Shown: piece by piece, positions 10,785 through 54,744 of the stretch
How positions within the stretch are numbered: position 1 is the first letter of the stretch
Layout of the letters: the number at the start of each line of letters is the position of its first letter
Source: Octopus sinensis
Lineage: Eukaryota
DNA: 64,000 nt
Direction: 5' to 3'
Assembly (NCBI RefSeq): GCF_006345805.1
Contig: NC_043009.1
Coordinates: 47,988,001 to 48,052,000 of the forward strand
Translations under genes and position numbers: made by a program
The notes under the pieces: generated by a model
What the model saw: only the letters and a program-made list of their open reading frames with translations
What the model was told of the DNA's origin: nothing
Database searches by the model: none

Positions 10785-10830
10785 CATACATACATATATA
10801 CATACATACATACATACATACATATAAACA
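10120..10830. repeat. (CATA)n array of about 700 bp
   Basis: Direct reading. Confidence 0.95.
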
Positions 10831-13920: not shown

Positions 13921-13951
<31 letters not shown>

Positions 13952-22534: not shown

Positions 22535-22789
22535 CTCTCTCTCTCCCTCTCCCTCCCTCTCTTTATGTCTCTCTCTCTCTCTCTCTCTCCCTCCTTCCCA
22601 CCTTTCTTTCTTCCCTTCCAAATGCACTCAAAAATTCTTAAAATAAACAGAAATAAAGAAATCCAACATAATCGATCGTTCGGACTTCATTTTTCAGTGA
22701 ACGCTGACGTCTTCATTGCTACGGAAACAGGCGTGTTCCCGATTAGCATTATTCTATTCAGGTACAGCAGCCAGCCAGCTCACAAGTCT

Positions 22790-22816
22790 GTGTGTGTGTT
22801 TGTGTGTGTGTGTGTG

Positions 22817-22871
<55 letters not shown>

Positions 22872-23780
22872 TTTGAGTGTGTGTGTGTGTGTGTGTTTGT
22901 GTGTGCGTGTGTATGTGTCTGTGTAAGCACGTATATATGTAGTCATGTATGCGCGTGCACGTTGGTATGTATGTATGTATGTATGTCTATGTATGTATGT
23001 GTATACATTTGTGCATATGTGAATGTGTGTGTATTTATGTATGCATTTATACGTGCGTGTAGTTATGTATGTGCAAGTATGTGCATGTATGTAGATATGT
23101 ATGCTTGTATATATGTATGTGAGTATGTGGGTGTATTTCTGCATGCATTTATATGTGTGTGTAGTTATGTATGCATGTATGTTCATGTATGTATATATGT
23201 AGATATGTATGTGTATGCATGCTTGTATGTATGTATGTATGTATGTATGTATGTATGTATGTATGTATGTGAGTGTGTGGGTGTATGTATGCATGCATTT
23301 ATACGCGTGTGTAGTTATGTGTGCATGTAAATGTGAATGTATGTGTATATGTATACGTGTATTCATGTATGTATAGGTGTATGTGTAGGTGTATGTATAT
23401 ATGTATACGTGTATTCATGTATGTATAGATGTGTGTGTGCATATTTATGCATGCATAAATATGTGTATGTATGTTTGTATGTATGTATGTACGTACGTAT
23501 GTCTGTCTGTCTATGTATGTATGTATGTTTGTGTATGTATATGTGTATGTATTTATATATGTAGCCATATATGTTTGTACACACGCACATATGCATGCAT
23601 GTATGTGTATTTGTGTGTGTGAGTGTCTGTCTGTCTGTATGTATGTATGTATGTATTTGTGGGTCTGTGTGTCTGTGTAGGCATGTTCATATAAGTGTGT
23701 GTATGGGCTCTCTTCCTATCTGTGTATGCAATATGTATGTGTATGTATGTATGTATGTATTTATGTATGTGTGTATGTGT
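22790..23780. repeat. Degenerate (TG)n/(TATG)n array
   Basis: Direct reading. Confidence 0.9.
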
Positions 23781-23782
23781 AT

Positions 23783-24208
23783 CCACTCACACAAAAACAA
23801 ACATAACACACCCACGTCATTCAGATTTGGTTCAATGCTATCTTCATGTTATCGATACGCGAAACCCTTCCATACCTCTCCCAACCGCCATCCCATTGCT
23901 ATACTGGGCAAAGCTACTACGCAGTCACTCGACCTGCTAGAAATGGCAGCCAAATCTACCTCAAAGTACAACGTATCTTCTTAAATAACAAGGAATACAT
24001 TCCATAAAGGATTTGTAGGCGGATGTGTGATAGGAAACTCGGTTCCCAACTCGGGTTCAGTCCCACTGCGTGGCACCTTGAGCAAATGTCTTCTACTGTA
24101 GCCTCGGGCCGACCAAAGCCTTGTGAGTGGATTTAGTAGACGGAAACTGAAAGAAGCTCATCGTATATATATATATATACACACACATACACATACATAA
24201 ATACACAA

Positions 24209-37528: not shown

Positions 37529-37534
37529 TTTATT
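37529..37534 (-). promoter_or_regulatory. Candidate polyadenylation signal AATAAA of the DHDH-like gene
   Basis: AATAAA on the minus strand about 60 nt after the stop codon. Common hexamer in AT-rich DNA, so support is only positional. Confidence 0.45.
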
Positions 37535-37595: not shown

Positions 37596-37759
37596 CTAGA
37601 TTATGGTACATCGCATTTTCTCAAAAAAACTTAACTGTTCTTCCACTGGAACGGTGCTGAAATCATTTCTTGATCTGTAAAGTTTCTCTCGAACAGTTTC
37701 AAGAAGTCTCGAAACTGCTTGTGTCTGAGTTAATGTATGAAGTGGCGATTCTGTAAAAC
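37596..37759 (-). CDS. DHDH: DHDH-like terminal exon 7 (GFTESPLHTLTQTQAVSRLLETVREKLYRSRNDFSTVPVEEQLSFFEKMRCTII*)
   Basis: Acceptor catttttgcag|, phase 1. ESP motif aligns with GMKESPVIPL. TAG at 37598-37596. Confidence 0.88.
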
Positions 37760-37869
37760 CTGCAAAAATGAACGAGAAACTATAATCGGTTTTGTGCAGA
37801 AAATCAGCATGAAACTAAAAGAAAAAAAATATTGAAAGCATAGCAAGTAGAGATACGCTGTTTGGATTG

Positions 37870-38134
37870 AGTGGGGAGAGAGGGGGTAGAGAGAGAGGGG
37901 GGATAGAGAGAGGGGGGATAGAGAGAGGGGGGATAGAGAGAGGGGGGATAGAGAGAGGGGGGATAGAGAGAGGGGGGATAGAGAGAGGGGGATAGAGAGA
38001 GGGGGATAGAGAAAAGGGGGAGAGAGAAAAGGGGGAGAGAAAAGGGGGAGAGAGAAAAGGGGGAGAGAGAAAAGGGGGAGAGAGAAAAGGGGGAGAGAGA
38101 AAAGGGGGATAGAGAGAGGGGAGAGGGAAGAGAG

Positions 38135-38167
<33 letters not shown>

Positions 38168-38180
38168 AAGAAAGAAAGAG
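37870..38180. repeat. Polypurine 14-bp minisatellite (GGGGGATAGAGAGA)n grading into (GGGGGAGAGAGAAAA)-type units and (GA/GAAA)n
   Basis: Direct reading; starts about 110 nt from the exon 7 acceptor. Confidence 0.92.
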
Positions 38181-38224
38181 AGAGAGAAAGATTCTGACAG
38201 ACATTCTAATAATAATATTGGTTT

Positions 38225-39238
38225 CAAATTTTGGCACAAGGCCAGCAATTTCAGTGACGGGGCACTCAACTAGTACTTGTTTTATCGACTGAAAGGATGA
38301 AAGGCAAAGTCAAATTCGGCGGAATTTGAACTCAGAACGTGAAATGCCGCTGAGCATTTCGCCCTGTGTGCAAACTAATCTGTCAGGTCGCCGCCTTAAT
38401 AATATTGGCTTCAAATTTTGGCATAAGTTCCAGCAATTTCGTGGGCAGCGACTAAGTCGATTACAGTATTTAGCTGGTGCTTATTTTATCGAGCCCCGAT
38501 AGTATGTAGAGAAAAGTCGACCCTGGAGGAATTTGTTTTCAGAACATGAAGACAGAAGAATATTGCTGCTAAGCATTTCGTCCGACGCGTTAACCATTCA
38601 ACCAGTTCGTCGCTTTTACAGTGCCAATGACAATAACTATTTCTTTATTACCCACAAGGGGCTAAACATAGAGGGGACAAACATGGACAGACATAGGTAT
38701 AAAGTCGATTACATCGACCCCAGTGCGTAACTGGTACTTAATTTATCGACCCCGAAAGGATGAAAGGCAAAGTCGACCTCGGCGGAATTTGAACTCACAA
38801 CGTAACGGCAGCCGAAATACCTATTTCTTTACTACCCACAAGGGGCTAAACAGAGAGGAGACAAACAATGACAGACAAACGGATTAAGTCGATTATATCG
38901 ACCCCAGTGCGTAACTGGTACTTATTTAATCGACCCCGAAAGGATGAAAGGCAAAGTCGACCTCGGCGGAATTTGAACTCACAACGTAACGGCAGCCGAA
39001 ATACCTATTTCTTTACTACCCACAAGGGGCTAAACACAGAGGAGACAAACAAGGACAGACAAACGGATTAAGTCGATTATATCGACTCCAGTGCGTAACT
39101 GGTACTTATTTAATCGACCCCGAAAGGATGAAAGGCAAAGTCGACCTCGGCGGAATTTGAACTCAGAACGTAACGGCAGACGAAATACGGCTAAGCATTT
39201 CGCCCGACGTGCTAACGATTCTGCCAGCTCGCCGCCTT
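38225..39238 (-). mobile_element. OR1-like SINE trimer plus older copies in DHDH intron 6
   Basis: Two near-identical ~183-bp units (about 38821-39186) plus a variant unit; starts 30 nt from the exon 6 donor. Confidence 0.85.
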
Positions 39239-39267
39239 TACCAATGACAATAACAACGATAACTCAC

Positions 39268-39430
39268 CTGCACGGATCCAATGACGTACAAGTTCGGCCT
39301 GACAAATGAATCCCATGCTCTCGGGATAATTAAATTCAACATCCGTCGAAGGATTCGCCAAACCAAGCGGGATTTCCGTCTCTACACTATTTATCGTTAT
39401 TTTGTTGGTGGACCAAAGTGGCGGATGTAT
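39268..39430 (-). CDS. DHDH: DHDH-like coding exon 6 (IHPPLWSTNKITIN...FNYPESMGFICQAELVRHWIRA)
   Basis: Acceptor tttttcacag|, donor G|gtgagt, 163 nt, phase 0 to 1. Aligns with PCWCPT...NFDNGAGMSYEAKHV. Confidence 0.9.
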
Positions 39431-39692
39431 CTGTGAAAAAGAAATATTTGGATATATTCTGGCACACATTAAAATTTTTTTTGCGAGGCGTTACTTCGAA
39501 GTTTTAATAACAGCCTTAATCAAATTGATAACTATTAGGCCGAAACATCAAATTAACTGTCAACCTTTTCTTCGTAAAAATATGTTAGTTTACAGAAAAA
39601 TATTGAGCGATGCTTCAATTTGTTTTTATGTATAACTATATATAAAACAAAATTATGTGGAAACATATACAGTATGTATGTGTGTATGTATT

Positions 39693-39741
<49 letters not shown>

Positions 39742-39761
39742 CATACACACACATATATATA

Positions 39762-41006
39762 TAGGGGTTGGACAAAATAGAAACTCCTTAAAATTTCGAG
39801 CAAATTTATTTTAATATGGGGTAGGACTGCCTTTGGCAGTAATTACAGCTTAAATTCTACGAGGTATGGATTCGTACAAAGTTTGAATTGTTTCTAAAGG
39901 AATTTTTGTCCTTTCTTCAGCGAAAACAGTTTCCAGTTCTTGTAGGGATGATGGCGGAGGATATCAACTCCTTACTTGATTTTCAAAAGTGCACCATAAA
40001 TGTTCAATAATATTGAGATCTGGTGACCGGTGGCCAGATAAGATGTTCAACTTCACTAGAATGTTCCTCGTACCAATCAGTAACAACTTTAGGCTGTGTG
40101 AATTAGGGCATTACCATCCTGAAAGATTGCGTTCCCCTCCAGAAACAGTTCTGCAACCATAGGATGAATTTGATCAGATAAAATGCTTAAATAGTCTTGA
40201 CTATTAATTCTGCCATGAAGGGAAACCATTGGGCTGGTGGATTTCCAAGATCCCCCTCCCCCATCAGATCATCACAGATCCTTCATATTTAACAGCCGGA
40301 AGAAGGCAGTCTGGGTCAAATGCATCTTTTGGCTGTTTCCACATGTATACTCGGCCGGTGGTCGAAAACAGGGTAAAGGATGACTCGTCTGAGAAAATAA
40401 CATGCTTCCACTGCTCTAGGGACCAATTCTGTAAGTTTTTACTCCACTCTAAACACTTTGTAACGTTTGTTTATGAAAGTAGTGGTTTTCTGATTGCAGC
40501 CCTCCCGTGAAATCCGGCTTTGTGCAGCTCCCGGCAAACAATTTTTGTAGAAACTAGGTTCTCTAGGTAGTCATTAAGTTCTGCAGTAATTTTGGGAGCT
40601 GTACTTTTGTGATCCTTTCTAACAATTCGCATAAGAGTTCGACGGTCCCTATCTGAAAGTTTTGGTTTCCTTCCGGAGTTTTGTTTCGACGAGGTTTTTC
40701 CCTCTTTCTCAAAGGCTGACATTACTTTCGAGACATACTTCTTGATATAAACATTACGGCTGTTTTCGTTACGCTAGCGCCTGCAATACGAGCACCAACA
40801 ATTTGACCTCTTTGAAAGTCCGATAGATCTGTCATTTTAATGAACTTTAATTACCTCTTTCTGATGATATCTGAAAAGAAACAGCAATTTTAGCAAAACA
40901 TATTAAGCAACACTAACAGTAAATGAAAATACATCAGCTTTTGACGGTTTTATAGATATTTCAAGATTATGATGCTAGGTGTTTCCATTATTTTGTCCAA
41001 CCTCTG
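39762..41006 (-). mobile_element. Tc1-like transposon, full length but disrupted, in DHDH intron 5
   Basis: TIRs (C/T)AG(A/G)GGTTGGACAAAATA flanked by TA; N-terminal ORF SGRKPKLSDRDRRTL...STKIVCRELHKAGFHGRAAIRKPLLS; downstream catalytic remnants with stops. Confidence 0.9.
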
Positions 41007-41050
<44 letters not shown>

Positions 41051-41749
41051 AGTAAAAAGCACACTTTGCATAGTTTTAATATATTTTAAAATATGTTTTA
41101 AATAAATTTTGCATTGTGTTTGTTGACCGGTTTCGCTTTCGCTAATCATGACATTGAAATTATTGTAATTTCGTATTTTCTTAAGAAAATTTTAGTCCAT
41201 GTTATATGTAGATAAATTTATGAATGAATGATTCAAGAAGTAGAAAAATCTAAAGAGATGTAATAGGTGATAGTTATTATTGAGGGTTAAGGGAGGTAAT
41301 TAGTCATCTTTCGGGATGGGATGGGGGGGGGGGTAAATATGCACAAAAACTTAAAAGCTGAAGTAGTGAGAAAAAATATGTACAGTGATGGGTATGTGAT
41401 CATGAATTAAAATATATACACTGAGATCAAAGTTGGTTATATTTAGACGTGTTGCATTACAAGTCACCACGTGGGGATAATCGAAATTCCTCCCTTTATC
41501 TTAATGTATATATAGATGAAAAGTGGTGTTTCAGTCGGATTGCAGGCCATATTGGGGCACCGCCTTAAAAAACTTTTGTCGAACAAATCGATCCCAGTAC
41601 CTTCTTTCTAAGCTCTTTTTTGCCGAAGCGTTAGGTTTCGGGGACGTAAACACACCTATATCGGTTGTGAGTGAATTTGGTAGACTGAAACTTTGTTCGT
41701 CTAAATGCCTTCAAGGCGGTGCCCCAGCGTGGTCGCAATCCAATAAAGT

Positions 41750-42049
41750 TGTTGTTGTTTGTTCCTTCTCGAGTCACTTCTAGCTCATAAGGGCCGGTTT
41801 CCCGGTTTCTTTGGCGTATAGGTTCCCCACCTGGACGGGACACCGGTCCGTCGCAGGTGAGCTGCAAAATGCAGGAGGAAAGAGCGAGAGAAAGTTGTGG
41901 CGAAAGAGTCAGCAGAAGTTCGCCATTACCTTCTGCCGGAGCCGCGTGGAGCTTAGGTGTTTCGCTCATAAACACACAAATAGCCCAGTCTGAGATTCGA
42001 ACCCGCGATCCCTCGACCGCTGCTCTAACCACTAGGCCATGTGCCTCCA
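41750..42049 (-). mobile_element. tRNA-derived SINE, H2-like head + T2, with 14-bp TSD
   Basis: TSD CAATCCAATAAAGT at 41736-41749 and 42050-42063. Confidence 0.88.
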
Positions 42050-42197
42050 CAATCCAATAAAGTAGTTGAAGACAAAAACCATAAGTTCTTTGCGCCTATT
42101 GTTTTCAGAAGCTTCTGCTTTCTCAAAGTCACTTCCAGATTTTTAAAAAAAAGAAAAAAAAATTACAAACAAAAAGTTTAAAGTCAGAATTCCTTAC

Positions 42198-42322
42198 ATA
42201 AATGCTTCCATTTGTTCCATAGATCCAGGCATCTGCTCTTCCTTTCAGTTTTGAATGACATGACAAAGAAGCTTTGCTACCATTTTGATACAGAAGGATA
42301 ATGTTACAAGCTTCATCAATAC
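42198..42322 (-). CDS. DHDH: DHDH-like coding exon 5 (GIDEACNIILLYQNGSKASLSCHSKLKGRADAWIYGTNGSIY)
   Basis: Manual translation. Acceptor attgacctaag|, donor TAT|gtaagg, 125 nt, phase 1 to 0. Aligns with GVDDTVTVLLQY...VSGTKG. Confidence 0.9.
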
Positions 42323-42938
42323 CTTAGGTCAATAGAATAAAAATTTACGTTAGTGTTTTCTGTAGTATAAAAAGGAGACAGAACAAGATCTAGTTTGTCT
42401 TAATACCAGCAGAAATAGCATTTCTTTCTCTCTCACACATACACACACAGTCTTGTGAGTGGATTTGATAGATGGAAACTGGAAGAAGCTGGTCATATGT
42501 TTGTGTGCGTGTGTCCCCACCACTGCTTGACAGTTGGTGTTAGTGTGTTTATTTTCCTCGTAACTTAGCAGTTCGGCCACAAAGAGACCGATAAGTACCA
42601 GGCTTATAAAACAAAATAGGTACTGCGGTCGATTTATTCTACTGACAATTCTTCAAGGCGCTGCCCCAGTATAGCCGCAGTCTAATGACCGAAACACGTT
42701 TTTCTCTATCCCTCGATCTATCTATCTACATCCTGTTTATTGGTATTTCATGATTTATTAGTGGTTCGGCTGTACATAACACATCCCTTTTCTTTATCTC
42801 TCTCCGTGCATGTATGTATAATACTCGAATTGCTCATGTTAAGCATCTTGGTTAAGACTGTAATGCAGCTGAAGTGACACAATGCGAACCCGTCATCGTT
42901 CCGTCAGTAATCAAAAATATTGGACATTTGTCCTAATT

Positions 42939-43325
42939 GGATGGGAAGCACTGCGTCGGTTACGACGACGAGGGTTCCGGTTGATCCGATCAACGGAACA
43001 GCCTGCTCGTGAAATTAACGTGCAAGTGGCTGAGAACTCCACAGACACGTGTACCCTTAACGTAGTTCTCGGGGATATTCAGCGAGACACAGAGAGTGAC
43101 AAGACTGGCCCTTTGAAATACAGGTACAACAGAAACAGGAAGTAAGAGTGAGAGAAAGTTGTGGTGAAAGAGTACAGCAGGAATCACCACCATCCCTGCC
43201 GGAGATCGTGGAGCTTTAGGTGTTTTCGCTCAATAAACACTCACAACGCCCGGTCTGGGAATCGAAACCGCGATTCTACGACCGCGAGTCCGCTGCCCTA
43301 ACCACTGGGCCATTGCGCCTCCACT
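42939..43325 (-). mobile_element. tRNA-derived SINE, head H2 + tail T1, with 13-bp TSD
   Basis: TSD ATTTGTCCTAATT at 42926-42938 and 43326-43338. Confidence 0.88.
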
Positions 43326-43679
43326 ATTTGTCCTAATTAGCCAATTGTTAAACCAGTTCTTCTCAAAACTATCTGATGTAGCGTACCGGCAGTTTTTTTT
43401 CTCTCTCTAATGTGCCAGGTACTAGTAATATTTCTTAGCAATATTTCTTTCTACTCTAGGAACAAGATCCGAAATTTTAGGGGAGGGGGCCAGTCGATTT
43501 GATCGATTCCCAGGACGCAACTGGTACTTAATTTATCGACCCAGAAAGGATGAAAGGCAAAGTCGACTTTGCGGGATTTGAACTCAATTTCTTAGTAATA
43601 TTTTATACCAGAAACAATATATATATAAAGAACATAAAAGTTGACAATTTTTTTTATCTTATATTTATTTTGTAAACAA

Positions 43680-44045
43680 AATAGGCGTAGGAGTGGCTGT
43701 GTGGTAAGTAGCTTGCTTACCAACCACACAATTCCGGGTTCAGTCCCTCTGCGTGGCACCTTGAGCAAGTGTCTTCTACTATAGCCTCTGGCCGACAAAA
43801 GCCTTGTGAGTAGATTTGGTAGACGGAAACTGAAAGAAGCCTATCGTATATATGTATATGTAAGTGTGTATGTTTGTGTGTCTGTGTTTATCCTCCCAAC
43901 ATCTCTTGACAACCGATACTGGTGTGTTTACGTCCCTGTAACTTAGCGGTTCGGCAAAAGAGACCGATAGAATAAGTACTAGGCTCGACTAAAGGCGGTA
44001 CTCCAGCATGGCCACAATCAAATGACTGAAACAAGTAAAAAAGTA
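43680..44045 (+). mobile_element. OR2-like SINE in DHDH intron 4
   Basis: Same architecture; antisense to the gene. Confidence 0.85.
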
Positions 44046-44214
44046 AATAATATAATATTATATAAATATTTTATAAGCATTTTCTGTCTCTTTTCTGGAA
44101 ATTTGCCACGTTCCCGCAGCTGATGGCTCGCGGACCAGCACCGGCCCGCGGATCACCACTTTGAATAGCATTGGTTTAAGCGACAAGCTATTGTTTAACA
44201 ATGTATTTACTTGC

Positions 44215-44527
44215 TGTGAAGGCGCGTGGCTTAGTGGTTAGGGGCATTCGGCTCATGATCGTAAGGTCGCGAGTTCAATTCCCAGCGACGCGTTGTGTCC
44301 TTGAGCAAGACACTTTATTTCATGTTACTCCAGTCCACTCAGCTAGCAAAAATGAGTAGCATCTGTATTTCAAAGGACCAGCCTTGTCACACTATGTCAC
44401 GCCGAATCTCCAAGAAGGGTACACATGTCTGTGGAGTGCTCTGCCACTTGCACGTTAATTTCACGAGCAAGCTGTTCCGTTGATCATATCAGCTAAGACC
44501 CTAGTCGTCGTAACCGACTGAGTGCTA
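44215..44527 (+). mobile_element. tRNA-derived SINE, H1 + T1
   Basis: Same family as 2527-3120. Confidence 0.85.
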
Positions 44528-45304
44528 TTTACTTAATAAATTGCGCAGCCGAATCTACCGTAAATGACAACACGTTCTTCATAAGTGGGCCCCATTGGAT
44601 GATGTTGTTTTTTTATGATTGGAATGCTTTTCATCAGAAGATGACTGTCAAAAGAGGATCGTTTCAATATCTTTGTTTGTCACAATGTCGTTGATAGATA
44701 TAATAAATTGAAAGAACAAAAGTTGTAGGAAGGAAGTGAAAGTGGAACTAAGAATATGAGAGACTTGGGGCAGAGAACCTGGTCGAGGTTATGTCATTTG
44801 ATGTCACGTTGAAGAGCTAATAGTTTCTTGCTATGAAGACATATGGACAGACAGGTTTTTAAAACGCGCCGTGTCTTCAAGCAATCTCCAGGCTATGAAC
44901 ACATGGTCCGTTCTATTTGAAAACCAATGCTCTGGTACATTAGAAACCACGAGAAAAACTAAAGTAAGTGCAAGGGTGAATAAAAACGGGGGTGGGGGAT
45001 AAGAAAATTAGAGTTACGTCTTCTTTGACTGTAGAAATCATAATTGAACTAGTTGTAGAATAGTTCTACTGATAGGGCTCCAAAGTTTGCGCGACAATCT
45101 ACTTGGATCTAACATCAACAATGGGTTACATTACTCAATTTACTTCTGATGATCTGGCTTTACTGCGTAAATTACTAGTTCTAGCTGGTGAAACACGTGT
45201 ACACATTATGTAATGTGTGAGATTATATAAATTCTGTAATCTCATCTCGAATTTTATTTCGCTCTGTGTGCGTGGGGGGTGGGGGTGAGAGAACATATAT
45301 TTAC

Positions 45305-45554
45305 CGTTACTTGTAAAATTTCCAATAGTGAGGACGTGTTCAGGATTCTCTCGGAATACAAATTGTACCAACCACAAAAGATACACGCCTATATTGGAAA
45401 TACAGCCTCCGCTAATTCCTGTAGTGGATCTCTTTTCCTTATGCAGAACATCGAAAAATAGAGCAGCATCGAAATATTTTACATCCCCTATGGTACCTTG
45501 ATCAATTTCCTCTTTAATGTGTCTAAAAATCGGCAGGAAACACATCCAGATGCC
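45305..45554 (-). CDS. DHDH: DHDH-like coding exon 4 (GIWMCFLPIFRHIKEEIDQGTIGDVK...GGCISNIGVY...GNFTSN)
   Basis: Acceptor ctcttcatcag|, donor G|gtaaat, 250 nt, phase 0 to 1. Aligns with AIWTRFFP...GTLGDL...GGALLDIGIY. Confidence 0.93.
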
Positions 45555-47342
45555 CTGATGAAGAGAGAACAAATCCAGTTAACGTGCTCATGGAATCAAC
45601 TGTAAATAAGTACCTCCCCACTAGAAACATGCATGCAAACACATACACACACACACACGCGCGCGCGTGCAAACACATTAACTCAAGCAGAAGTATTCCC
45701 GCACATCTATGTGAAAGAAATTTTGTTTTTCTATTTGGCGTGTAACCAGAAAAAAATAACATTTCTAAATCTCTGAAGAGATATTCAGTAACAGTTCTTT
45801 AAAGTAAAGACTGTTCGCCAACATAATGTGGCAGTTCTGGATGGGATGAATGTTACTGTTGTTTAGGCCCACGGATATTGTGTCGTATAACCAGCTGGAA
45901 ATGTTTCCAGTTGCTAAACAACAGTAATAATCGTCCCGTCCAGGACAGCCACATTATGTTGGCAAATAGTCTTTAATTTCCAGAAAGAAGCTTAACAGGA
46001 AGTGTCAATTATGCCTCTCCCTATACCAGTAATTAAAAAGTCAATCGCAAATGGGTTCATTCATTTGAAGACAGCTCAGTCAAACGTCAATACTCCCACT
46101 GATAACGCTTTAGCAGTAAACTGCTCAGTTTTAAGATGCCTTATCTATCGATAACTTTCTATGTAGTTTGTATAATCCTATGAACCCGGAAAAATTTTAA
46201 ACAGAGTTACTTACTTGCAAATAAATGTGTTAACATGTGATATTATTGACCTAGGTTACCGTAGTCTTTTCCGTAGGCTTTTCTCTCCACGGATAAACCA
46301 TATCTGTTTCCCCCCTTTACACTTTACATCACGATATTTCTGTGATACACGATCCCTATTGATGGTTTTTTTTACGATCCCTTTTGATCGAAAACCTACC
46401 CCACTTTTTTTTCTCCCTCAAAAGAAAAGCTCTTTGTAATTTGTCCCCTCTGTGTTCAGCCCTGTGTGGCTAATAAAGAAACATACGTAGTTTGTATGTA
46501 CTTTTCTTTGAGATTTATTTAAAGTTTTCTTAGCCTTTTCAGAATTCCAGACGATCAGAGAGTAGCAAGGCTCTTTTGATTAAGTCAACATCTCTTGAGA
46601 TTTGTTGCTATCTGAATTGGTTGATGTATGTATATGTGATGTGTGCTATGTGTGTCGATAAAACTTTTACTCATGGATGTGTGTCACGACAGAACATGAA
46701 CATGGTCGTATGTTTCATTACATTTTTTATGTGTAAGTGCATTCCATGGGTGTATGCGAATGTGTGCATATGTTCACTCACTCAGGAACTTCAAATGGAG
46801 AATCACTGAAATGTTTTTACAAGGTTTCGCTGTACCTAATCGACTGTATTTGAAGAATGGGAACCATTCTGCTCTGTTCTTTTCGTGGAAAACCAAAAGT
46901 GTTATCGATATTTTTTTTTCTTTGTATCTATAGACAATCTAATCTTACATACTCCTTAAAAGAAAAAAAAGGAGGGAAAAGGTTACGCATATAACGCCTT
47001 CGATCATGTATCTATTCACGATTGAGTTGGGGTTAAATAATTCCAGCATGGGGGGGTCTTTACATGCTATCTCAATTTTCAAGAAATAGCAACCAAATCT
47101 TTTTCACATAACGCCTTTTGACACACACACCACACACACACACACACACGAGGTAAACAAAACAAAAAAAAAAGAAAAACTACGTAGAGGAGATAAGACA
47201 TACAGAATGTATGAGGTTGACACTCTTCAGAAAAAAATAGACAAGGAGAGAAAAAAGCGGAGAAAAGATCAAACGTGTCTCAGACGATTATGGCAATGCT
47301 TTTATTTCTCTCTCTCTCACACACACGCACGCGCGCGCGCGC

Positions 47343-47567
47343 GCACGGAAATGCTAAGTTCCTGGCTTTAAGGGTATCGCGAAAGAACTCGGAGAGGTTG
47401 GGCTTCCTCAACCTTCCGAGTTCTTTTACAGGGCTCAGAAAAACTGAAGGACAGCTGCAATAAGTGCGTCAATCTGAGAGGGGAATATGTTGAATAAAAT
47501 TATAATTAACTGATCCTCCTGTATTTTCTTTTACTTAAAGCCAAGAACTTTTCAACAACCCCTCGTG
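47343..47567. mobile_element. Short mariner-derived MITE with internal hairpin
   Basis: Ends resemble CGAGGGGTTGTTGAAAAGTTC(C/T)TGGCTTTAAG; internal stem AAAGAACTCGGA...TCCGAGTTCTTT. Confidence 0.65.
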
Positions 47568-48001
47568 TGTACACATACACACACGCGCGCACACACACAC
47601 ATGCGCGCGCGCACACACACGCACGCGCGCGCACACACACACACACACGCGCGCACACACACACACGCGTGCACACACACACACACACACGCGTACACAC
47701 ACACACACACACACGCGTACACACACACACACACGCGTACACGCGTGCACACACACACACACACACGCGTACACACACCGCGTACACACACACACGCGTA
47801 CACACACACGCGCGCACACACAACACACACACGCGTACACACACACGCGTACACACACACACACACACGCGTACACACACACACGCGTGTACACACACGC
47901 GTGTACACACACACACACGCGTACACACACACACACGCGTACACACACACACACACGCGTACACACACACACACACACACGCGTACACACACACACACGC
48001 G

Positions 48002-48036
<35 letters not shown>

Positions 48037-48252
48037 GCGTACAACACACACACACACACGCGTACACACACACACACACGCGTACACACACACACACGCG
48101 CGTACACACACACACACGCGCGTACACACACACACGCGTACACACACACACACACGCGTACACACACACACACACGCGTACACACACACACACGCGCGTA
48201 CACACACACACGCGTACACACACACACACGCGTACACACACACACACACACG

Positions 48253-48285
<33 letters not shown>
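47568..48285. repeat. Alternating purine-pyrimidine array (CA)n punctuated by CGCGTA
   Basis: Direct reading; ends about 70 nt from the exon 3 donor. Confidence 0.95.
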
Positions 48286-48286
<1 letters not shown>

Positions 48287-48354
48287 TTTCTCGATCAGAG
48301 ATGGCCAGGAGTTAAACAGCAAAATAGGCAAGTTTCATAAAAAAAGTACCATAC

Positions 48355-48518
48355 CTCCATGAAGAACACTTTATTTCGTCTTGCAAACTCTATCAGCGAA
48401 AAGCATTCCTCTGCTCTCAAAGCGCAAGGAGCTTCGCATAGAACGTGTTTGTTATATTGTATCATAAGATAACAATCTTCGTAACGGTCACCGACTGGAG
48501 ATGATACATACACGACAT
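48355..48518 (-). CDS. DHDH: DHDH-like coding exon 3 (DVVYVSSPVGDRYEDCYLMIQYNKHVLCEAPCALRAEECFSLIEFARRNKVFFME)
   Basis: Acceptor ctattccag|, donor GAG|gtatgg, 164 nt, phase 1 to 0. Carries KHVLCExP and FFME motifs of the Gfo/Idh/MocA family. Confidence 0.93.
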
Positions 48519-48608
48519 CTGGAATAGACAATAACAAAAATGAAAAAGAACAACGTACACCTGTGAATGAATTGTAACGTGGAATATCAATGTCAATGTA
48601 TATCAATG

Positions 48609-49199
48609 TGTGGTGTTAGCAGTGCTATGGGCTGTGATGAGCTATGTGGTGTTAGTGGAGAGGATGACAGATGAGGTGGACGGAAGTAAGGCTTGCAGGG
48701 GTCGGCGGAAAAGTGAAAGGGGCATGCGTGGGCAGGAAGCACGTGTGGTCAGGCAGAACATGTGGTGAGTACCAGCAAAGACGGCGCAGAGACAAGACGT
48801 GTTTAATTCGTGAGAGTGACCGTTGATTTCGCCGAGGTCAACAGGTAAGGCCTTTTGTATTTCTTTCGCCTATTTGCTTCTTTTTTTCTGTTGTCCTCTT
48901 CCTCCATCACACTACAAGCTATTTCGTCCCATAACAGAGAAAAAAAAGAAGGAAACGGGAGAAAGAAATACCTCGGCGAATTCAGCGGTCACTCTCACGA
49001 ATTAAACACGTCTTGTCTCTGCGCCGTCTTTGCTGGAACTCACCACACGTGCTGCCTGACCACACGTGCTTCCTTCCCACGCATACCCCTTTCACGCTTC
49101 CGCCAGCCCCCGCAAGCCTTACTTCCGTCCACCTCATCTGTCATCCTCTCCACCAACTCAACATAGCTCATCACAGCCCATAACACTGCTAACACCACA
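48609..49199. mobile_element. Non-autonomous long-TIR (foldback) element, Ginger-like termini, in DHDH intron 2
   Basis: 230-bp inverted arms (48609-48838 and 48970-49199, about 93% identical by eye), TGT...ACA ends, 5-bp direct repeat CAATG on both sides. Confidence 0.8.
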
Positions 49200-49454
49200 C
49201 AATGTTTGAACAGTATTTCTGAGACATCATGCGATTTAGTTACCAAAAAGTCACTTCGCTATGAACTACAGTTCCGTTGCATGTCAACTTGGGCATGTGT
49301 ATTCTTCTAAAGCCCCATGACAGCTAATGCCTTATGAGTGAATCTGATAGACGGAGATTGTGTGGAAACCTGTCGGGTTTGTGTAATACATACATACATA
49401 CATACATACATACATACATACTCAACGGGTTGTGTGTGCGTGTGTATACATATA

Positions 49455-49687
49455 CCTATTTCTTTACTGTCCACAAGGGGCTACACACAGGCAACAAACA
49501 AGGACAGAAAAACGGACTAAGTCGATATATATCGACCCCAGTGCGTAACTGGTACTTATTTAATCAACCCCGAAAGGATGAAAGGCAAATTTGACCTCGG
49601 CGGAATTTGAATTCACAACGCAGAGGCAGACGAAATACTGCTAAGCATTTCGCCCGGCGTGCTAACGTTTCCGCCAGCTCGCCGCCT
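49455..49687 (-). mobile_element. OR1-like SINE monomer
   Basis: Same consensus. Confidence 0.82.
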
Positions 49688-50019
49688 TATATATACATAT
49701 GCCACCATCACTTGACAACTGTGTTGGTTTGTTTACGTTCCCGTTATCTAGCGGTTCGACAAAAATCAATATAAAACCAGACTTAAGTACTTGAAAGCAG
49801 TACCCTAGCATGGCTGCAGTCCAATGACAAAGTAGAAGGTAAGTATAGACTGATCCTTTCCGTATTTGCGCACCAAACCGTTGCCCTCTCCTAGTTACTT
49901 GCGTCGACCTTTTCTGTCGTAACCTTAATGTGACCTTGATGTTGTGTGACGTTCTGGAGCATTAAAAAATATATCTAGCTCCACCATGGAATTTTGGAAA
50001 TATAAAATAATTCCATGAC

Positions 50020-50370
50020 TGTGTGGAGGTGCAGGGTGGGTGAGTGGTAAGAAGTTTGCTTCCCAACCACATGGTTCCGGGTTCAGTCCCACTGCGTGGC
50101 ATCTTCGGCAAATACCTTCTGCTATGGCCTCTTGCTGACCAAAGCCTTGTGAATGGATTGGTTGACGGAAACTGAAAAGCCCGTCGTGTGTGTGTGTGTG
50201 TGTGTGTGAGACCACCGCTTGACAACCGGTGTTGGTGTGTTTACGTTCCTGTAACTTTACTGCTTGGCAAAAAGAAACAGTAAGTACTGGGCTTAAAAAA
50301 TAACTACTGGGATTGATACATTCGACTAAAGATTCACGGTGGTGCCCCAGCATGGTCGCAGTCTTATGAT
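50020..50370 (+). mobile_element. Diverged OR2-like SINE abutting the DHDH exon 2 donor
   Basis: Head, CORE-like segment and tail recognisable. Confidence 0.75.
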
Positions 50371-50388
50371 AACAAAGAAACGTTTTAC

Positions 50389-50500
50389 CTATATTCTTAT
50401 TTCTGACAAATTCTTCACAGCATCCGTAAGTATTTGGTATTTTAAACTTCTTCCCGAACTCACTGGCAGCTTTACTGTCATCACAACCAACAGCAACGAT
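50389..50500 (-). CDS. DHDH: DHDH-like coding exon 2 (IVAVGCDDSKAASEFGKKFKIPNTYGCCEEFVRNKNI)
   Basis: Found by manual translation, absent from the ORF track. Acceptor ttttccaaccag|, donor G|gtaaaa, 112 nt, phase 0 to 1. Aligns with [31 protein letters not shown] of vertebrate DHDH. Confidence 0.9.
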
Positions 50501-50684
50501 CTGGTTGGAAAAGAAATTTAAAATAAATGCATTTTATAGAAAACGTCTCAGGTAGCACAAATCCACAAATTTTAAGGGAAGTCTGTCCAGTACTTAATGA
50601 TACTGCGAAATTCAAACCCGAATGTTTATGGTGTAAAGCCGAAAATGCCGACGTGTAGAACGTGATAATTTTGACTAAAGATAT

Positions 50685-51012
50685 TTAATGCATAAAGCGC
50701 GAGGATTTGCCCTTACATAGCATGGACGGCTGAGCAAATTTTATGAAAATGAGACTACCATGCACACATAAAAAACAAAGAAATAGTTTAAAATATCTTA
50801 GTATATAATGGTGACAAGTTTTACATTATCTGAAAAGTCATTAGTTGAACTATTAGTCCTCTTGCATTCTGGGGTGGGGGGGTAACGGAGCGTTTGAGTG
50901 ACAGACCCCGACAAACGCCCATAAATTAAATGCATCTACCTGGGCCACGATCGTGGCCTGTGGACTTGTGCCTGACGGCCACGATCATAGCCTGTTGCGC
51001 TTTATGAGTTAA
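50685..51012. mobile_element. piggyBac-like MITE in DHDH intron 1
   Basis: TTAA at both ends; 12-bp TIR TGCATAAAGCGC / GCGCTTTATGAG (10 of 12 match); internal 16-bp palindrome GGCCACGATCGTGGCC at 50943-50958. Confidence 0.6.
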
Positions 51013-51039
51013 GGACAAGATCAGCAATGTTGAAGAGAG

Positions 51040-51897
51040 AGGGTAAGTAAATTCCATTAATTTCCAGTGCTTGACTGGTACTTTAATTTAAAAGGAAAAG
51101 TTGATGTTGGTGAATTTTGCCCTACTCTAAGCACAAGACGTGAATTTTTGAAGGGAGGGGAATTATAGATTACATCAACTGATACCCGTTTTATTGATCC
51201 CGAAAGAATGAAAAGCAATATCGTCCAATATCGTCAGAACGTAAATGGAAAAAACAAAACAAAAAAAATGCTAAGCTATTTGTCCATCGCGCTAACGATT
51301 CTTCCAGTTCGTTGCCTTAATGTTTTCCACTGTAGACACAAAGTCTAAAACTTTTGGGGAGGGGACAAGTTGAAAATATCGTCCCCAACGCTCAACTATT
51401 TCATATATCATCGACCCCAAAAGGGTGAAAGGTAAAGTCAACCTCGGCGCAATTTGAACTTAGAACGTCAAGACGGACGGAATGCCGCTAAGCATTCTGT
51501 CCGGCGTGCTAACGATTCTTTTCTACTCTAGGCACAAGGCCCGAAATTTTGGGGGAAGGGGCCAGTCGATTAGATCGATCCCAGTACGCAACTGGTACTT
51601 AATTTATCGACCCTGAAAGGATGAAAGGCAAAGTCGACCTCGGCAGAATTTGAACTCAGAACGTAAAGACGGACGAAATACCTATTTACTGCCCACAAGG
51701 GGCTACACACAGAGTGGACAAACGGATTAAGTCGATTATATCGACCCCAGTGCGTAATTGGTACTTATTTAATCGACCCCGAAAGGATGAAAGGCAAAGT
51801 CGACCTCGGCGGAATTTGAACTCAGAACGTAGCGGCAGACGATATACCGCTCAGCACTTCGCCCGGCGTGCTAACGCTTCTGCTAGCTCACCGCCTT
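51040..51897 (-). mobile_element. Cluster of OR1-like SINE copies of different ages
   Basis: Repeated GAAAGGATGAAAGGCAAAGTCGACCTCGGCGGAATTTGAACTC motifs. Confidence 0.8.
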
Positions 51898-53054
51898 TCT
51901 GCTTGCGAAAAATAATACCATGATATAGTAATACCCGGCAAATTAACCGTGATGGGTGATGCTAGTCTAAAGGAAACGTTTAATTTTTGCACATAAAGAC
52001 ATTTGGAACACTCCAGAATTCTGAAAACATTTGGTAAGCTCCAGAATTTTTTGGAAGGGCTCATAGAAACCCAAAGATTCAACAATGTTGGGATATTTTA
52101 TGGTAGCTGGAAGTCCCACGTTTCTAGACTGGTATTTGATCATTTTTCATCCTTGAACTTTCAACACAAAGATTATATTCTAATGCTTATGTTCTTGTAT
52201 ACACGAAACTTTACAGCTGTTATGCCTGGCAAACAATTTCTGGGTTTATACACATGAATTTTAAAATTGTACAATTGCGTATTGAAAAGTTCTACATATT
52301 GTTTATTAAAAAGTGTGTAATGTTATGAATATACTTTATTGAAAAAAAATTTTGCTTCTTGAAAACTATGATTTTAAAGCCGTATGTTATGGAACTTTAG
52401 ACGCGAATACATTTATTTTCTTTGTACACGGTCAAAAAGAATGCCTTGACAAAGTTCACTGGTCACTTTTCAGAATACAAGAGAACTCGTAACAAATATC
52501 TACTTAAACCAAATACAAACTGGTCTTATCTGTAATGTTTATTTTAACATGTTCATATAATACACAGAACAAAATGGTGACCCCACCCCGCCAGCCGTAT
52601 TTTGTCGATCCCAGAAAGATAATCTGTGAAGTTGACGAAATTAGGATTTAAACTCAAAATGGAAATAATGAAATACTGTCAAGTAGTTAATAAAATATCA
52701 ATCAACAATAATGAAGGGAAATATCACGATTATTTGCAGTTTAGCCGCAATCGCTTTTGGTCGAACAGAGCTATCATCAAAGACATTCTGCCAGAGATTA
52801 TATCGAATATCTTTAATATTTTTAAAAACATTGTCTGCGAGACAATGTAGTCAACGTACCCTTCTCATAATCCTTTGAGCCCTTCGGTCCCCTATAACTG
52901 GTACGATTTCCATGGAGGAGGTTGTGACATTCATATCCTCGTGAACCCGAAATAATCAAAAGCGTTTGTTGGGACTTTGGGATTTGGAACGCAGAAATAG
53001 GGGACGTAATTATAGTTTAACATGGTTATTACACATTACTCCACGAGAAGCATA

Positions 53055-53272
53055 GGGATGGTTTCCTGGTTTCTCTGGCGTATATATTCCTCCTTGGATG
53101 GGACGCCAGTCCATTTCAGGATAGTCCTTTTTACCAGCTGGGTGGACTGGAGCAACGCGAAATAAAGCGTTTTGCTCAAGAACTCAACGCATCGTCCGGT
53201 CCAGATATCGGAACCATAATCTTACGATTAGGAGTCCAACATCCTAACAACTAAGCCATGCATCTCTACATT
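53055..53272 (-). mobile_element. Diverged SINE, H1-like head + T2-like tail
   Basis: TTCTTGAGCAAAACGCTTTATTTC...CTCCAGTCCAC core joined to GACTGGCGTCCCATCCAAGG...GAAACCAGGAAACC. Confidence 0.65.
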
Positions 53273-54089
53273 TGAGTGAACCCTTTATATAACTCAATGA
53301 AAAACTATCAAGTCACTCGACCTGCTACATATCACAAATCTCATCACATCCCTCATAAAAAAATGACAGTGTATATTAAACAGTGTTTGAGTGTGCCTAT
53401 AAAAACGGCAGGATGCTAAGGGACCGAATACCCTTGACAACAGGTCTTGCTCTATTTGAGCAAAATCTAAAACCAGGGGCGCTAAAATTAAGTGCCTGTT
53501 GTATACAGAACCTAATTCAATTAACCATATATCGTCCTTACACATTTGGAACTTCCGGTCACAATTCGACTAGAATCTTGTTAGAAACCATACGATGGCA
53601 GAAACATGTATGTAAATGCAGGCATTTACATACAAGCTACGTTCAGAGTTCAAATCTTGCTGAGGTCGACCAACGTTGGCTTTTCCCAGTTAAGTTCTAA
53701 AGTTTATTCGTTGATCATCAGGATTGACCTGGGACTAAACCATCCAGTCTTAGGTTCGTCATGTAGACCGGAGCTTATTTTGGTTGCCATGGCGTTTAAG
53801 CGTCAGAACGAGTACAGCACTATCGCACTGAATGGAACGCCAGTCCATTGTGGGGTTTACCAGCAATTGTTGCTGGTGCTCATTTTCAACCGAGTAAATG
53901 AACTGAAGCAATATAAATTGAAACATTTTGCTTAAGGACGCAACTCCGATTCGTAATTGAAACCACGACTTCAACATCATAATTCCAGCAACCTAACCTC
54001 TAGGTCAAACACCATAACATAAGACACTCGCTGAGAACAGTTTTAAACTCTTACATCCACTCAAATCTAAATATGGTTACAAGTTTGCT

Positions 54090-54660: not shown

Positions 54661-54744
54661 TTCATGTAGAGACTGATCCATACAGCCCAAAGCTTTGCAA
54701 AAATCTTCTGCTATACATCCAGTACCATATATTCCCCAACGCAT
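54661..54744 (-). CDS. DHDH: DHDH-like oxidoreductase, coding exon 1 (MRWGIYGTGCIAEDFCKALGCMDQSLHE)
   Basis: ATG at 54744; Rossmann GxGxIA motif like DHDH N-terminus (LRWGI); phase-0 donor GAA|gtaaga. An acceptor (tttacag) lies 15 nt upstream of the ATG, so a further 5' exon is likely. Confidence 0.88.

What the first reader, a model, noticed from the sequence alone, without database searches (positions are those of the whole stretch)
37596..37680. C-terminal extension ending in a CaaX prenylation box (EKMR-CTII-stop)
Seen: after the region homologous to the DHDH C-terminal helix, the ORF continues RSRNDFSTVPVEEQLSFFEKMRCTII*, with Cys fourth from the end, aliphatic residues after it and basic residues before. 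Established: CaaX boxes ending in Leu/Ile/Phe are typical geranylgeranyl-transferase I substrates, and vertebrate DHDH is a soluble protein ending about 20 aa earlier without Cys. Inference: a lipid-anchored DHDH derivative. With the lost catalytic residues this suggests a membrane-tethered pseudoenzyme, which I do not know of as described for this family.
Basis: partly seen in the sequence, partly recalled or inferred. Interest (0 to 1): 0.72.

Follow-up and report, generated by a model that had tools for sequence, protein, structure and literature searches.

The report
Octopus DHDH-like protein with prenylation tail
An octopus copy of a normally soluble sugar/dihydrodiol dehydrogenase has lost key catalytic residues and gained a flexible tail ending in Cys-Thr-Ile-Ile; this end is kept in a distant octopod and human GGTase-I is known to lipidate that tetrapeptide, so the protein is probably membrane-anchored, though this is untested.

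Summary
On the minus strand, the last exon (37759-37596) of a 7-exon gene ends ...EKMR-CTII-TAG. The gene translates exactly to Octopus sinensis XP_029643826.1, a DHDH-like protein of 353 aa. The core matches monkey dimeric DHDH up to residue 325. The remaining 28 residues run about 18 aa past the vertebrate end.

One such ending could be chance (about 0.1% per protein). Conservation argues otherwise:
- O. vulgaris has the same tail, and O. bimaculoides has EKIR-CTII-stop.
- The Argonauta hians orthologue (44% identity, synonymous sites near saturation) has the same exon layout and ends FFDRIG-CTLL-stop.
- None of 147 other DHDH homologues ends in Cys-x-aliphatic-[LIFMV].

AlphaFold places the last six residues in low-confidence coil in both species. 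A published humanised-yeast assay found CTII near-completely geranylgeranylated by human GGTase-I.

The same clade alone replaces the family's His (to Arg), the EKP Lys (to Ala) and the Asp (to Asn). The Tyr is kept.

Best reading: an octopod-specific, catalytically remodelled DHDH paralogue carrying a working CaaX box. Lipidation, localisation and loss of activity are untested. No squid, cuttlefish or nautilus orthologue was found in the collections searched. A class I PDZ-ligand reading (x-T-x-I/L) remains possible.

The parts
37599..37610 (-). CaaX box: Cys350-Thr351-Ile352-Ile353 (TGT ACC ATA ATC)
   Evidence: Translation and sequence. Identical in O. vulgaris and O. bimaculoides; CTLL in Argonauta. 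CTII is geranylgeranylated by human GGTase-I on a Ydj1 reporter (PMC11152559).
37596..37598 (-). Stop codon TAG directly after the CaaX box
   Evidence: The stop is at the same position in O. bimaculoides (TAG) and Argonauta (TAA).
37599..37682 (-). C-terminal extension, residues 326-353, beyond the part that aligns to vertebrate DHDH
   Evidence: The monkey DHDH alignment ends at query residue 325. The Foldseek alignment to 2o48 spans 325 columns.
37617..37646 (-). Predicted short acidic amphipathic helix 338-347 (VEEQLSFFEK) holding the conserved Phe-Phe pair
   Evidence: AlphaFold2 DSSP, pLDDT about 65. FF is conserved in Argonauta (TFFDR, helix 344-348). Hydrophobic moment 0.44.
37596..37759 (-). 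Exon 7 (last exon): end of the C-terminal core helix, the linker, the CaaX box and the stop
   Evidence: Exact splice-aware reconstruction. The intron position is shared with Argonauta.
37529..37534 (-). AATAAA polyadenylation signal 61 nt after the stop
   Evidence: An AATAAA sits at the corresponding place in O. bimaculoides.
39268..39430 (-). Exon 6 (aa 246-299)
42198..42322 (-). Exon 5 (aa 204-245)
45305..45554 (-). Exon 4 (aa 121-203). Contains GGCISNIGVY: Asn174 (45395-45393) replaces the family Asp, and Tyr178 is retained.
48355..48518 (-). Exon 3 (aa 66-120). Contains Arg77 (48486-48484) in place of the invariant His, and Glu-Ala-Pro with Ala95 (48432-48430) in place of the EKP Lys.
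50389..50500 (-). Exon 2 (aa 29-65)
54661..54744 (-). Exon 1 (aa 1-28, start ATG at 54744)

Best explanation
The gene encodes an octopod-specific, fast-evolving paralogue of dimeric dihydrodiol dehydrogenase (GFO/IDH/MocA fold). The folded core ends at about residue 330. It is followed by a variable linker, a short Phe-Phe helix and a working CaaX box: CTII in Octopus, CTLL in Argonauta.

Proposed mechanism, all inferred:
1. Cytosolic GGTase-I, possibly also FTase for CTII, attaches an isoprenoid to Cys350.
2. RCE1 probably removes -TII, and ICMT methylates the new C-terminus.
3. The lipid anchors the protein to endomembranes or the plasma membrane. If the protein dimerises like DHDH, there would be two lipids per dimer.

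The clade has replaced the family's His, the EKP Lys and the Asp, and has kept only the Tyr. The protein is therefore probably not a normal dehydrogenase. It more likely acts at the membrane as a binding or scaffolding protein, or as an enzyme with altered chemistry.

Shown here: the gene model, the motif, its conservation, the predicted flexibility of the tail and the clade-specific residue changes. Inferred: lipidation, processing, localisation and loss of activity.
For: - The gene model is exact and canonical. The same terminal exon and stop occur in O. vulgaris, O. bimaculoides and A. hians.
- Octopus and Argonauta are 44% identical, with pS 0.67 and dS about 1.7. The linker has diverged freely (tail pN 0.45, one 4-aa indel). 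Even so, Cys and Thr are identical, a2 and X stay aliphatic, and the stop is at the same place.
- None of 147 other top DHDH homologues has a Cys-x-aliphatic-[LIFMV] end. The three with Cys at -4 read CLKQ, CDAE and CWKR.
- In AlphaFold models of both species the last six residues are coil, with pLDDT 47 and 37, behind a disordered linker.
- Human GGTase-I near-completely geranylgeranylates CTII and fully modifies CTIL on a Ydj1 reporter (PMC11152559). GGTase-I accepts X = L, F, I, M or V and relies mainly on a2 and X, and CTVL is prenylated (PMC11304957).
- A pre-CaaX Phe-Phe pair raises prenylation and membrane affinity in G-gamma 3 (PMC10590752).
- There is a precedent for a dehydrogenase paralogue anchored by C-terminal prenylation: ALDH3B1 (PMC4109017).
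- Clade-only substitutions are H77R (His in 147/147 others), K95A (Lys 97%), D174N (Asp 84%) and R35D/G (Arg 84%). Ala mutants of the K-D-H triad are inactive in a family member (PMC5969746).
Against: - There is no experimental or transcript-level evidence for this protein.
- Only two deep lineages (Octopus and Argonauta) carry the signal, so conservation rests on a single comparison.
- The 11-residue pre-CaaX stretch (EEQLSFFEKMR / DFDETFFDRIG) is acidic and has 4 hydrophobic residues. Known substrates favour a small, hydrophilic, often basic linker (PMC1175975).
- No conserved second membrane signal exists. There is no second Cys in the tail, and a polybasic run is found only in Argonauta.
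- The conserved Thr at a1 is not needed for prenylation, but it is what a class I PDZ ligand would need.
- Cephalopod prenyltransferase specificity is assumed, not tested.
- The Octopus sinensis-bimaculoides comparison has too few changes to say much (tail omega 0.24 from 2 substitutions).
Confidence: 0.62

Rival explanations
1. The conserved end is a class I PDZ-binding motif (x-Ser/Thr-x-hydrophobic-COOH: -C-T-I-I and -C-T-L-L), or another C-terminal docking peptide. It would recruit the protein to a scaffold without lipidation. The Cys would be incidental or part of the ligand.
For: Thr at -2 and Ile/Leu at 0 are conserved between Octopus and Argonauta. That is the class I consensus (established knowledge). 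Thr at a1 is not required for prenylation. The neighbouring FF-acidic helix is also conserved, as expected for an extended docking peptide.
Against: An exposed CTII end is near-completely geranylgeranylated by human GGTase-I in cells (PMC11152559). An unmodified PDZ ligand would therefore have to escape a ubiquitous enzyme. The Cys at -3 of a PDZ ligand has no known requirement, yet it is identical in both lineages.
Confidence: 0.13
2. The ending has no function of its own. It is a chance CaaX-like end on a relaxed, fast-evolving duplicate, retained in the few species sampled by descent or by constraint on something else, such as folding of the tail against the core.
For: The per-protein chance of such an end is about 0.1%, or tens per proteome. 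The paralogue evolves fast (29-35% identity to other DHDHs against 41-44% for the canonical Argonauta copy; omega 0.43 between two Octopus species). The tail as a whole shows pN about equal to pS against Argonauta. Only two independent lineages are available.
Against: With synonymous sites near saturation (pS 0.67), an unconstrained Cys-Thr-aliphatic-aliphatic-stop block would not be expected to survive while the adjacent linker changes and gains an indel. The whole gene is under purifying selection (dN/dS about 0.29 against Argonauta). Even a 'chance' exposed CTII would still be lipidated by GGTase-I.
Confidence: 0.17
3. Gene-model artefact: the real transcript ends elsewhere and the CTII end is not made.
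For: No RNA-seq could be inspected here, and no transcript-derived copy of the protein turned up in the protein collection.
Against: All splice sites are canonical and the intron positions are shared with Argonauta. A poly(A) signal lies 61 nt after the stop. The exon, reading frame and stop are conserved in four species under three annotation pipelines. The exon also encodes the end of the core's last helix, which the fold needs.
Confidence: 0.04

Closest known systems
Mammalian dimeric dihydrodiol dehydrogenase (DHDH; PDB 2o48), GFO/IDH/MocA family
   Same: Same two-domain fold (Foldseek TM 0.86/0.91, rmsd 1.8 A over 325 columns; phmmer E = 1.6e-45). Pfam PF01408 + PF22725 + PF02894. Retains Trp and Tyr178, the equivalent of Tyr180.
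   Different: His79, Lys97 and Asp176 equivalents are replaced by Arg, Ala and Asn. There is an extra ~18-aa tail ending in a CaaX box. DHDH is soluble and has no such end.
Canonical Argonauta hians DHDH-like paralogue GAB1601625.1 (P0014)
   Same: The closest homologue outside the clade (40% to Octopus, 33% to the Argonauta CaaX copy), on the same Argonauta contig.
   Different: Keeps His, Lys and Asp. It is 329 aa and ends ...EANHQKK, with no Cys and no extension.
ALDH3B1, a prenylated and palmitoylated aldehyde dehydrogenase
   Same: A paralogue of a soluble dehydrogenase family that is anchored to membrane by C-terminal lipidated cysteines rather than by a transmembrane helix (PMC4109017).
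   Different: Unrelated fold. ALDH3B1 is catalytically active and has a second lipid (palmitate). The octopod protein has one Cys in its tail and altered catalytic residues.
Geranylgeranylated CaaL proteins (G-gamma subunits, Rho/Rap GTPases)
   Same: A variable linker followed by a conserved Cys-a-a-[L/I] end. A pre-CaaX Phe-Phe pair, as in G-gamma 3, promotes prenylation and membrane affinity (PMC10590752). CTII and CTIL are GGTase-I substrates.
   Different: In the octopod tail the FF pair sits at -7/-6, not next to the Cys. The pre-CaaX stretch is acidic rather than basic.

Membership tests
GFO/IDH/MocA oxidoreductases (dimeric DHDH subfamily) | N-terminal Rossmann NAD(P)-binding domain | tested here: met
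   PF01408, E = 8.5e-17, residues 1-121. The GxGxxA-type loop GIYGTGCIA is present.
GFO/IDH/MocA oxidoreductases (dimeric DHDH subfamily) | C-terminal alpha/beta domain and overall fold | tested here: met
   PF22725 and PF02894. AlphaFold pLDDT 91.9. Best structural match is 2o48, TM 0.86/0.91.
GFO/IDH/MocA oxidoreductases (dimeric DHDH subfamily) | EKP motif with catalytic Lys | tested here: not met
   The motif reads E-A-P (Ala95, window 48432-48430). Lys is present in 143 of 150 aligned homologues; Ala occurs only in the three octopod sequences. The role of the Lys is from PMC5969746.
GFO/IDH/MocA oxidoreductases (dimeric DHDH subfamily) | Conserved Asp and Tyr/His of the K-D-(H/Y) triad | tested here: inconclusive
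   The Asp is replaced by Asn174, while Tyr178 is retained.
GFO/IDH/MocA oxidoreductases (dimeric DHDH subfamily) | Invariant His (His79 of mammalian DHDH) and Arg after beta-2 (NADP 2'-phosphate site) | tested here: not met
   H77R, with His in 147/147 others. R35D in Octopus and R35G in Argonauta. The functional roles of these residues come from my own knowledge of the DHDH literature and were not checked here.
GFO/IDH/MocA oxidoreductases (dimeric DHDH subfamily) | Dehydrogenase activity and cofactor binding | not testable with these tools
   Needs recombinant protein.
CaaX-type prenylated proteins | Cys exactly four residues from the C-terminus | tested here: met
   Cys350 of 353; Cys351 of 354 in Argonauta.
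CaaX-type prenylated proteins | Aliphatic a2 and an X residue accepted by a prenyltransferase | tested here: met
   a2 = Ile or Leu; X = Ile or Leu. The accepted GGTase-I X set is L/F/I/M/V (PMC11304957). The exact CTII is near-completely modified by human GGTase-I (PMC11152559).
CaaX-type prenylated proteins | Accessible, flexible C-terminus with an ~11-residue small or hydrophilic linker | tested here: inconclusive
   Predicted coil with low pLDDT in both species, which fits. The -11..-1 stretch, however, is acidic with 4 hydrophobic residues and a predicted short helix (criterion from PMC1175975). PrePS itself could not be run.
CaaX-type prenylated proteins | Motif conserved in orthologues | tested here: met
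   Three Octopus species and Argonauta hians. No orthologue outside octopods was available.
CaaX-type prenylated proteins | Second membrane signal (polybasic run or palmitoylatable Cys) | tested here: not met
   There is a single Cys in the tail. A polybasic run KVRHRRSHRK occurs in Argonauta only. This feature is not required for prenylation itself.
CaaX-type prenylated proteins | Covalent isoprenoid on the Cys; prenylation-dependent localisation | not testable with these tools
   Needs metabolic labelling, mass spectrometry or imaging.
Class I PDZ-binding C-termini | x-[S/T]-x-hydrophobic-COOH | tested here: met
   -C-T-I-I and -C-T-L-L. The consensus is from my own knowledge. Binding is not testable here.

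The most novel reading that the evidence does not exclude
Octopods evolved a geranylgeranylated, catalytically dead DHDH paralogue that works as a membrane-tethered partner. One option is that it heterodimerises with the active, soluble DHDH through the family's dimer interface and recruits it to membranes. Another is that it acts as a membrane-bound NAD(P)/sugar-binding sensor. [quoted passage not shown]
Probability: 0.12. Interest if true: 0.7.

Novelty: new variant of a known kind. Interest (0 to 1): 0.5.

Why it matters
CaaX prenylation and GFO/IDH/MocA dehydrogenases are both well known. I found no report that combines them: no paper in the searchable library holds 'dihydrodiol dehydrogenase' together with prenylation and CaaX.

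If confirmed, this would be a clean natural example of a soluble metabolic enzyme turned into a membrane protein by three linked changes in one lineage: gene duplication, loss of catalytic residues and gain of a short lipidation tail. It would add a lineage-specific member to the small set of prenylated non-GTPase proteins. It would also give pseudoenzyme research a tractable case, because back-mutating three residues and making one Cys-to-Ser change test both halves of the idea.

The reach is limited. The gene is known from only four octopod species, and nothing yet ties it to a phenotype.

Tried and rejected
- **More orthologues.** I ran three word-index searches and one exhaustive HMMER search of 1.84 billion representatives. 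They gave only O. sinensis, O. vulgaris, O. bimaculoides and A. hians. No squid, cuttlefish, nautilus or other mollusc member of the EAP/CaaX clade appeared. The other collections offered here are bacterial, archaeal, viral or metagenomic, so I did not spend scans on them.
- **Is the O. bimaculoides copy a pseudogene?** It is annotated 'partial', 229 aa. I rejected the pseudogene idea: exons 5 and 6 simply run into runs of N, and exon 7 is intact.
- **Gene-model artefact.** Rejected.
- **Other C-terminal signals.** There is no Rab-type CC/CXC motif, no second Cys for palmitoylation and no SKL-type PTS1.
- **Scores for CTII and CTLL in the 8000-CXXX yeast screen.** The supplementary files held as text do not contain the table.
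- **Literature on DHDH catalytic residues** (His79, Lys97, Tyr180). It is not in the searchable library. I relied instead on family-level evidence and on conservation counts.
- **Octopus DHDH literature.** Nothing relevant.
- **dN/dS on the tail between the two Octopus species.** Too few substitutions to be informative.
- **tRNA scan of the window**, to see whether the abundant short repeats are tRNA-derived. No tRNA-like hit.
- **Pfam scan of five other window ORFs that looked transposon-like by eye.** No hits, apart from the Tc3-type HTH fragment.

Full report
**What is in the sequence**

The finding lies on the minus strand. Translating 37772-37596 in reverse complement gives ...AGFTESPLHTLTQTQAVSRLLETVREKLYRSRNDFSTVPVEEQLSFFEKMRCTII*. 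The CaaX codons and stop are TGT ACC ATA ATC TAG, at 37610-37596.

A protein search returned a 353-aa Octopus sinensis protein named 'trans-1,2-dihydrobenzene-1,2-diol dehydrogenase-like' (XP_029643826.1). The locus is on chromosome record CM016871.1.

A splice-aware reconstruction found seven minus-strand exons:

| Exon | Window coordinates |
|---|---|
| 1 | 54744-54661 |
| 2 | 50500-50389 |
| 3 | 48518-48355 |
| 4 | 45554-45305 |
| 5 | 42322-42198 |
| 6 | 39430-39268 |
| 7 | 37759-37596 |

All have GT-AG borders, and the joined CDS translates exactly to that protein. An AATAAA lies 61 nt after the stop.

**Where the homology to DHDH stops**

phmmer against PDB sequences aligns residues 1-325 to residues 3-324 of the 334-aa monkey dimeric dihydrodiol dehydrogenase (2o48), with E = 1.6e-45. 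An AlphaFold2 model (mean pLDDT 91.9) matches 2o48 with TM 0.86/0.91 and rmsd 1.8 A over 325 columns. In the model:
- The last core helix is 309-330.
- Residues 331-337 are coil.
- Residues 338-347 (VEEQLSFFEK) form a short helix of modest confidence (pLDDT about 65).
- The last six residues, MRCTII, are coil with pLDDT about 47.

**Is the CaaX-like end more than chance?**

Taken alone, it is not. From rough residue frequencies, an end of the form C-x-[ILV]-[LIFMV] is expected in about 0.1% of proteins. The weight comes from comparison with other species.

- O. vulgaris (CAI9731947.1) has an identical tail.
- O. bimaculoides is annotated only as a 229-aa partial protein. That is because exons 5 and 6 run into assembly gaps. 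Its last exon is intact and reads ...EKIRCTII-TAG, followed by AATAAA.
- Argonauta hians protein GAB1601661.1 (354 aa, 44% identical) turned up in an exhaustive HMMER search of 1.84 billion representatives. It ends ...KLYKVRHRRSHRKSQDELDFDETFFDRIGCTLL. Its gene has the same seven exons with introns at the same codon positions, and the stop (TAA) follows the CaaX box directly.

Between Octopus and Argonauta, synonymous sites are close to saturation (pS 0.67, dS about 1.7), and whole-gene dN/dS is about 0.29. The linker part of the tail has diverged freely (pN 0.45, one 4-aa indel). Even so, Cys and Thr are identical, both following residues stay aliphatic, and the stop has not moved. A variable linker with a fixed CaaX end is the pattern seen in known prenylated proteins.

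As a control, I checked the 147 other proteins among the 150 aligned (the query, its O. vulgaris orthologue and 148 of the search's best hits). Three have Cys at -4 (CLKQ, CDAE, CWKR), and none has an aliphatic a2 with a GGTase-type X.

The Argonauta-Octopus split has a fossil minimum of about 29 Ma. It is younger than the Vampyromorpha-Octopoda split, which has a minimum of 162 Ma (PMC12682272).

**Would such an end be lipidated?**

The published record is favourable.
- GGTase-I modifies Caa[L/F/I/M/V] and relies mainly on a2 and X. CTVL, which also has Thr at a1, is prenylated (PMC11304957).
- Ile at X is valid for both FTase and GGTase-I (PMC1175975).
- The exact tetrapeptide CTII, placed on a Ydj1 reporter in humanised yeast, was shifted even without FTase. 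Human GGTase-I geranylgeranylated it 'near-completely', and CTIL was fully modified (PMC11152559).
- AlphaFold models of the Octopus and Argonauta proteins both leave the motif on a floppy end.
- The conserved Phe-Phe pair upstream recalls the pre-CaaX 'Phe-duo' of G-gamma 3, which raises prenylation efficiency and membrane affinity (PMC10590752). Here, however, it sits at -7/-6 and not next to the Cys.

Several points count against:
- The 11 residues before the Cys are acidic and partly hydrophobic. Known substrates favour small, hydrophilic, often basic residues there.
- There is no second Cys in the tail.
- A polybasic run is present only in Argonauta.

The protein may therefore sit on endomembranes rather than on the plasma membrane. 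Its membrane affinity may also depend on dimerisation, which would give two lipids per dimer. This last point is inference from the DHDH family being dimeric.

**The catalytic-residue claim**

I aligned 150 homologues and listed the columns where at least 80% of the 147 non-clade sequences agree but all three octopod sequences differ. The list contains eight columns. These four include the family's most conserved functional positions:

| Position in octopod clade | Residue in the 147 other homologues |
|---|---|
| H77R | His in 147/147 |
| K95A (the EKP motif reads EAP) | Lys in 97% |
| D174N | Asp in 84% |
| R35D (Octopus) / R35G (Argonauta) | Arg in 84% |

Tyr178, the equivalent of DHDH Tyr180, is kept.

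In a characterised family member, the EKP Lys, the Asp and the His/Tyr position form the catalytic triad. Ala substitution of any one of the three abolishes activity (PMC5969746).

The canonical Argonauta paralogue on the same contig (GAB1601625.1, 329 aa) keeps His, Lys and Asp and ends ...EANHQKK without a tail. It is 41-44% identical to other animal DHDHs, whereas the CaaX clade is only 29-35% identical to them.

So the tail and the active-site changes are joint, derived characters of one fast-evolving octopod paralogue. 'Pseudoenzyme' is a reasonable hypothesis but is not shown. The retained Tyr and the intact Rossmann loop leave room for ligand binding or altered chemistry.

**Best explanation and rivals**

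I put about 0.62 on a functional CaaX box that lipid-anchors a catalytically remodelled DHDH paralogue. The rivals are:

| Rival | Confidence | Main point |
|---|---|---|
| The end has no function of its own | about 0.17 | Hard to square with its survival beside a freely diverging linker at saturated dS. An exposed CTII would still be modified. |
| Class I PDZ or other docking peptide (x-T-x-I/L-COOH) | about 0.13 | Explains the conserved Thr that prenylation does not need, but requires escape from GGTase-I. |
| Gene-model artefact | about 0.04 | Contradicted by conserved exon structure, stop and poly(A) signal, and by three independent annotations. |

**Comparison with what is known**

By fold and sequence, the protein belongs to the GFO/IDH/MocA superfamily and is closest to dimeric DHDH. 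It fails the EKP-Lys and invariant-His tests, so it should not be filed as a DHDH enzyme.

It meets the sequence-level tests for a CaaX protein: Cys at -4, aliphatic a2, an accepted X, accessibility and conservation. The defining chemistry is untested.

The closest functional analogue I could document is ALDH3B1, a dehydrogenase paralogue held on membranes by C-terminal prenylation plus palmitoylation (PMC4109017). ALDH3B1, however, is an active enzyme.

No paper in the searchable library combines dihydrodiol dehydrogenase with prenylation and CaaX. I rate this as a new variant of a known kind, of moderate interest. It is easy to test, but it is lineage-restricted and has no known phenotype.

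**Limits**

- Only four species in two deep lineages could be compared.
- No transcript reads could be inspected.
- PrePS could not be run.
- The roles I give to His79 and to the Arg after beta-2 in DHDH rest on my own recollection of the DHDH literature, not on a source checked here.

Noticed in passing
window 37876-38134: A purine-rich 15-bp tandem repeat (GAGAGAGGGGGGAGA, 17.5 copies, 93% matches) lies in the last intron, only about 120 bp upstream of the exon 7 acceptor. AG-rich 8- and 26-bp arrays follow it to 38191.
   Followed up: no
window 38632-39188, and about 36 other places across the window: A 184-bp unit is repeated three times in tandem in intron 6. The same element has about 36 blastn matches throughout the 64 kb on both strands, at 76-97% identity. 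It looks like an abundant octopus short interspersed or satellite element. ARAGORN found no tRNA-like part.
   Followed up: partly
window 40471-40722 (minus), inside intron 5: An 83-aa ORF matches the Tc3-type transposase HTH domain (PF01498, E = 9e-11). It is a Tc1/mariner-family transposon remnant inside the gene. Five other ORFs elsewhere in the window that looked transposon-like by eye gave no Pfam hit.
   Followed up: partly
L002 17315-17500+ and 19499-19800+ (O. bimaculoides CM046613.1): The O. bimaculoides orthologue is annotated 'partial' (229 aa) only because runs of N interrupt exons 5 and 6. The first exons and the last exon are intact, so the annotation understates the gene.
   Followed up: yes
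L004 10001-14039 versus window 37596-54744: The same seven-exon gene spans 4.0 kb in Argonauta hians and 17.1 kb in Octopus sinensis. The difference is all intron, and the Octopus introns are full of microsatellites and interspersed repeats.
   Followed up: partly
window 47506-48362 (intron 3, abutting exon 3), also 9598-10852, 13263-14403, 22716-23984: Long imperfect (TG/CA)-rich and TATG/CATA-type microsatellite arrays produce spurious ORFs of hundreds of codons in several frames. One array ends within a few bases of the exon 3 donor at 48355.
   Followed up: no
P0012 (Poecilia latipinna XP_014911139.1): The top-scoring hit of the exhaustive search is a 1316-aa fish model made of four tandem DHDH units fused head to tail. 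Some units have altered motifs (SEKS for CEKP, and changes in the GGGALLDLGIY block). It may be a tandem gene array merged by annotation.
   Followed up: no
P0001 residues 160-167 (window exon 4) and the same place in P0013: Both AlphaFold models have a low-confidence loop (pLDDT below 50 at 162-165 in Octopus and 160-167 in Argonauta) just before the GGCxxN active-site segment. This is the stretch that holds the clade-specific R161K/N change.
   Followed up: no
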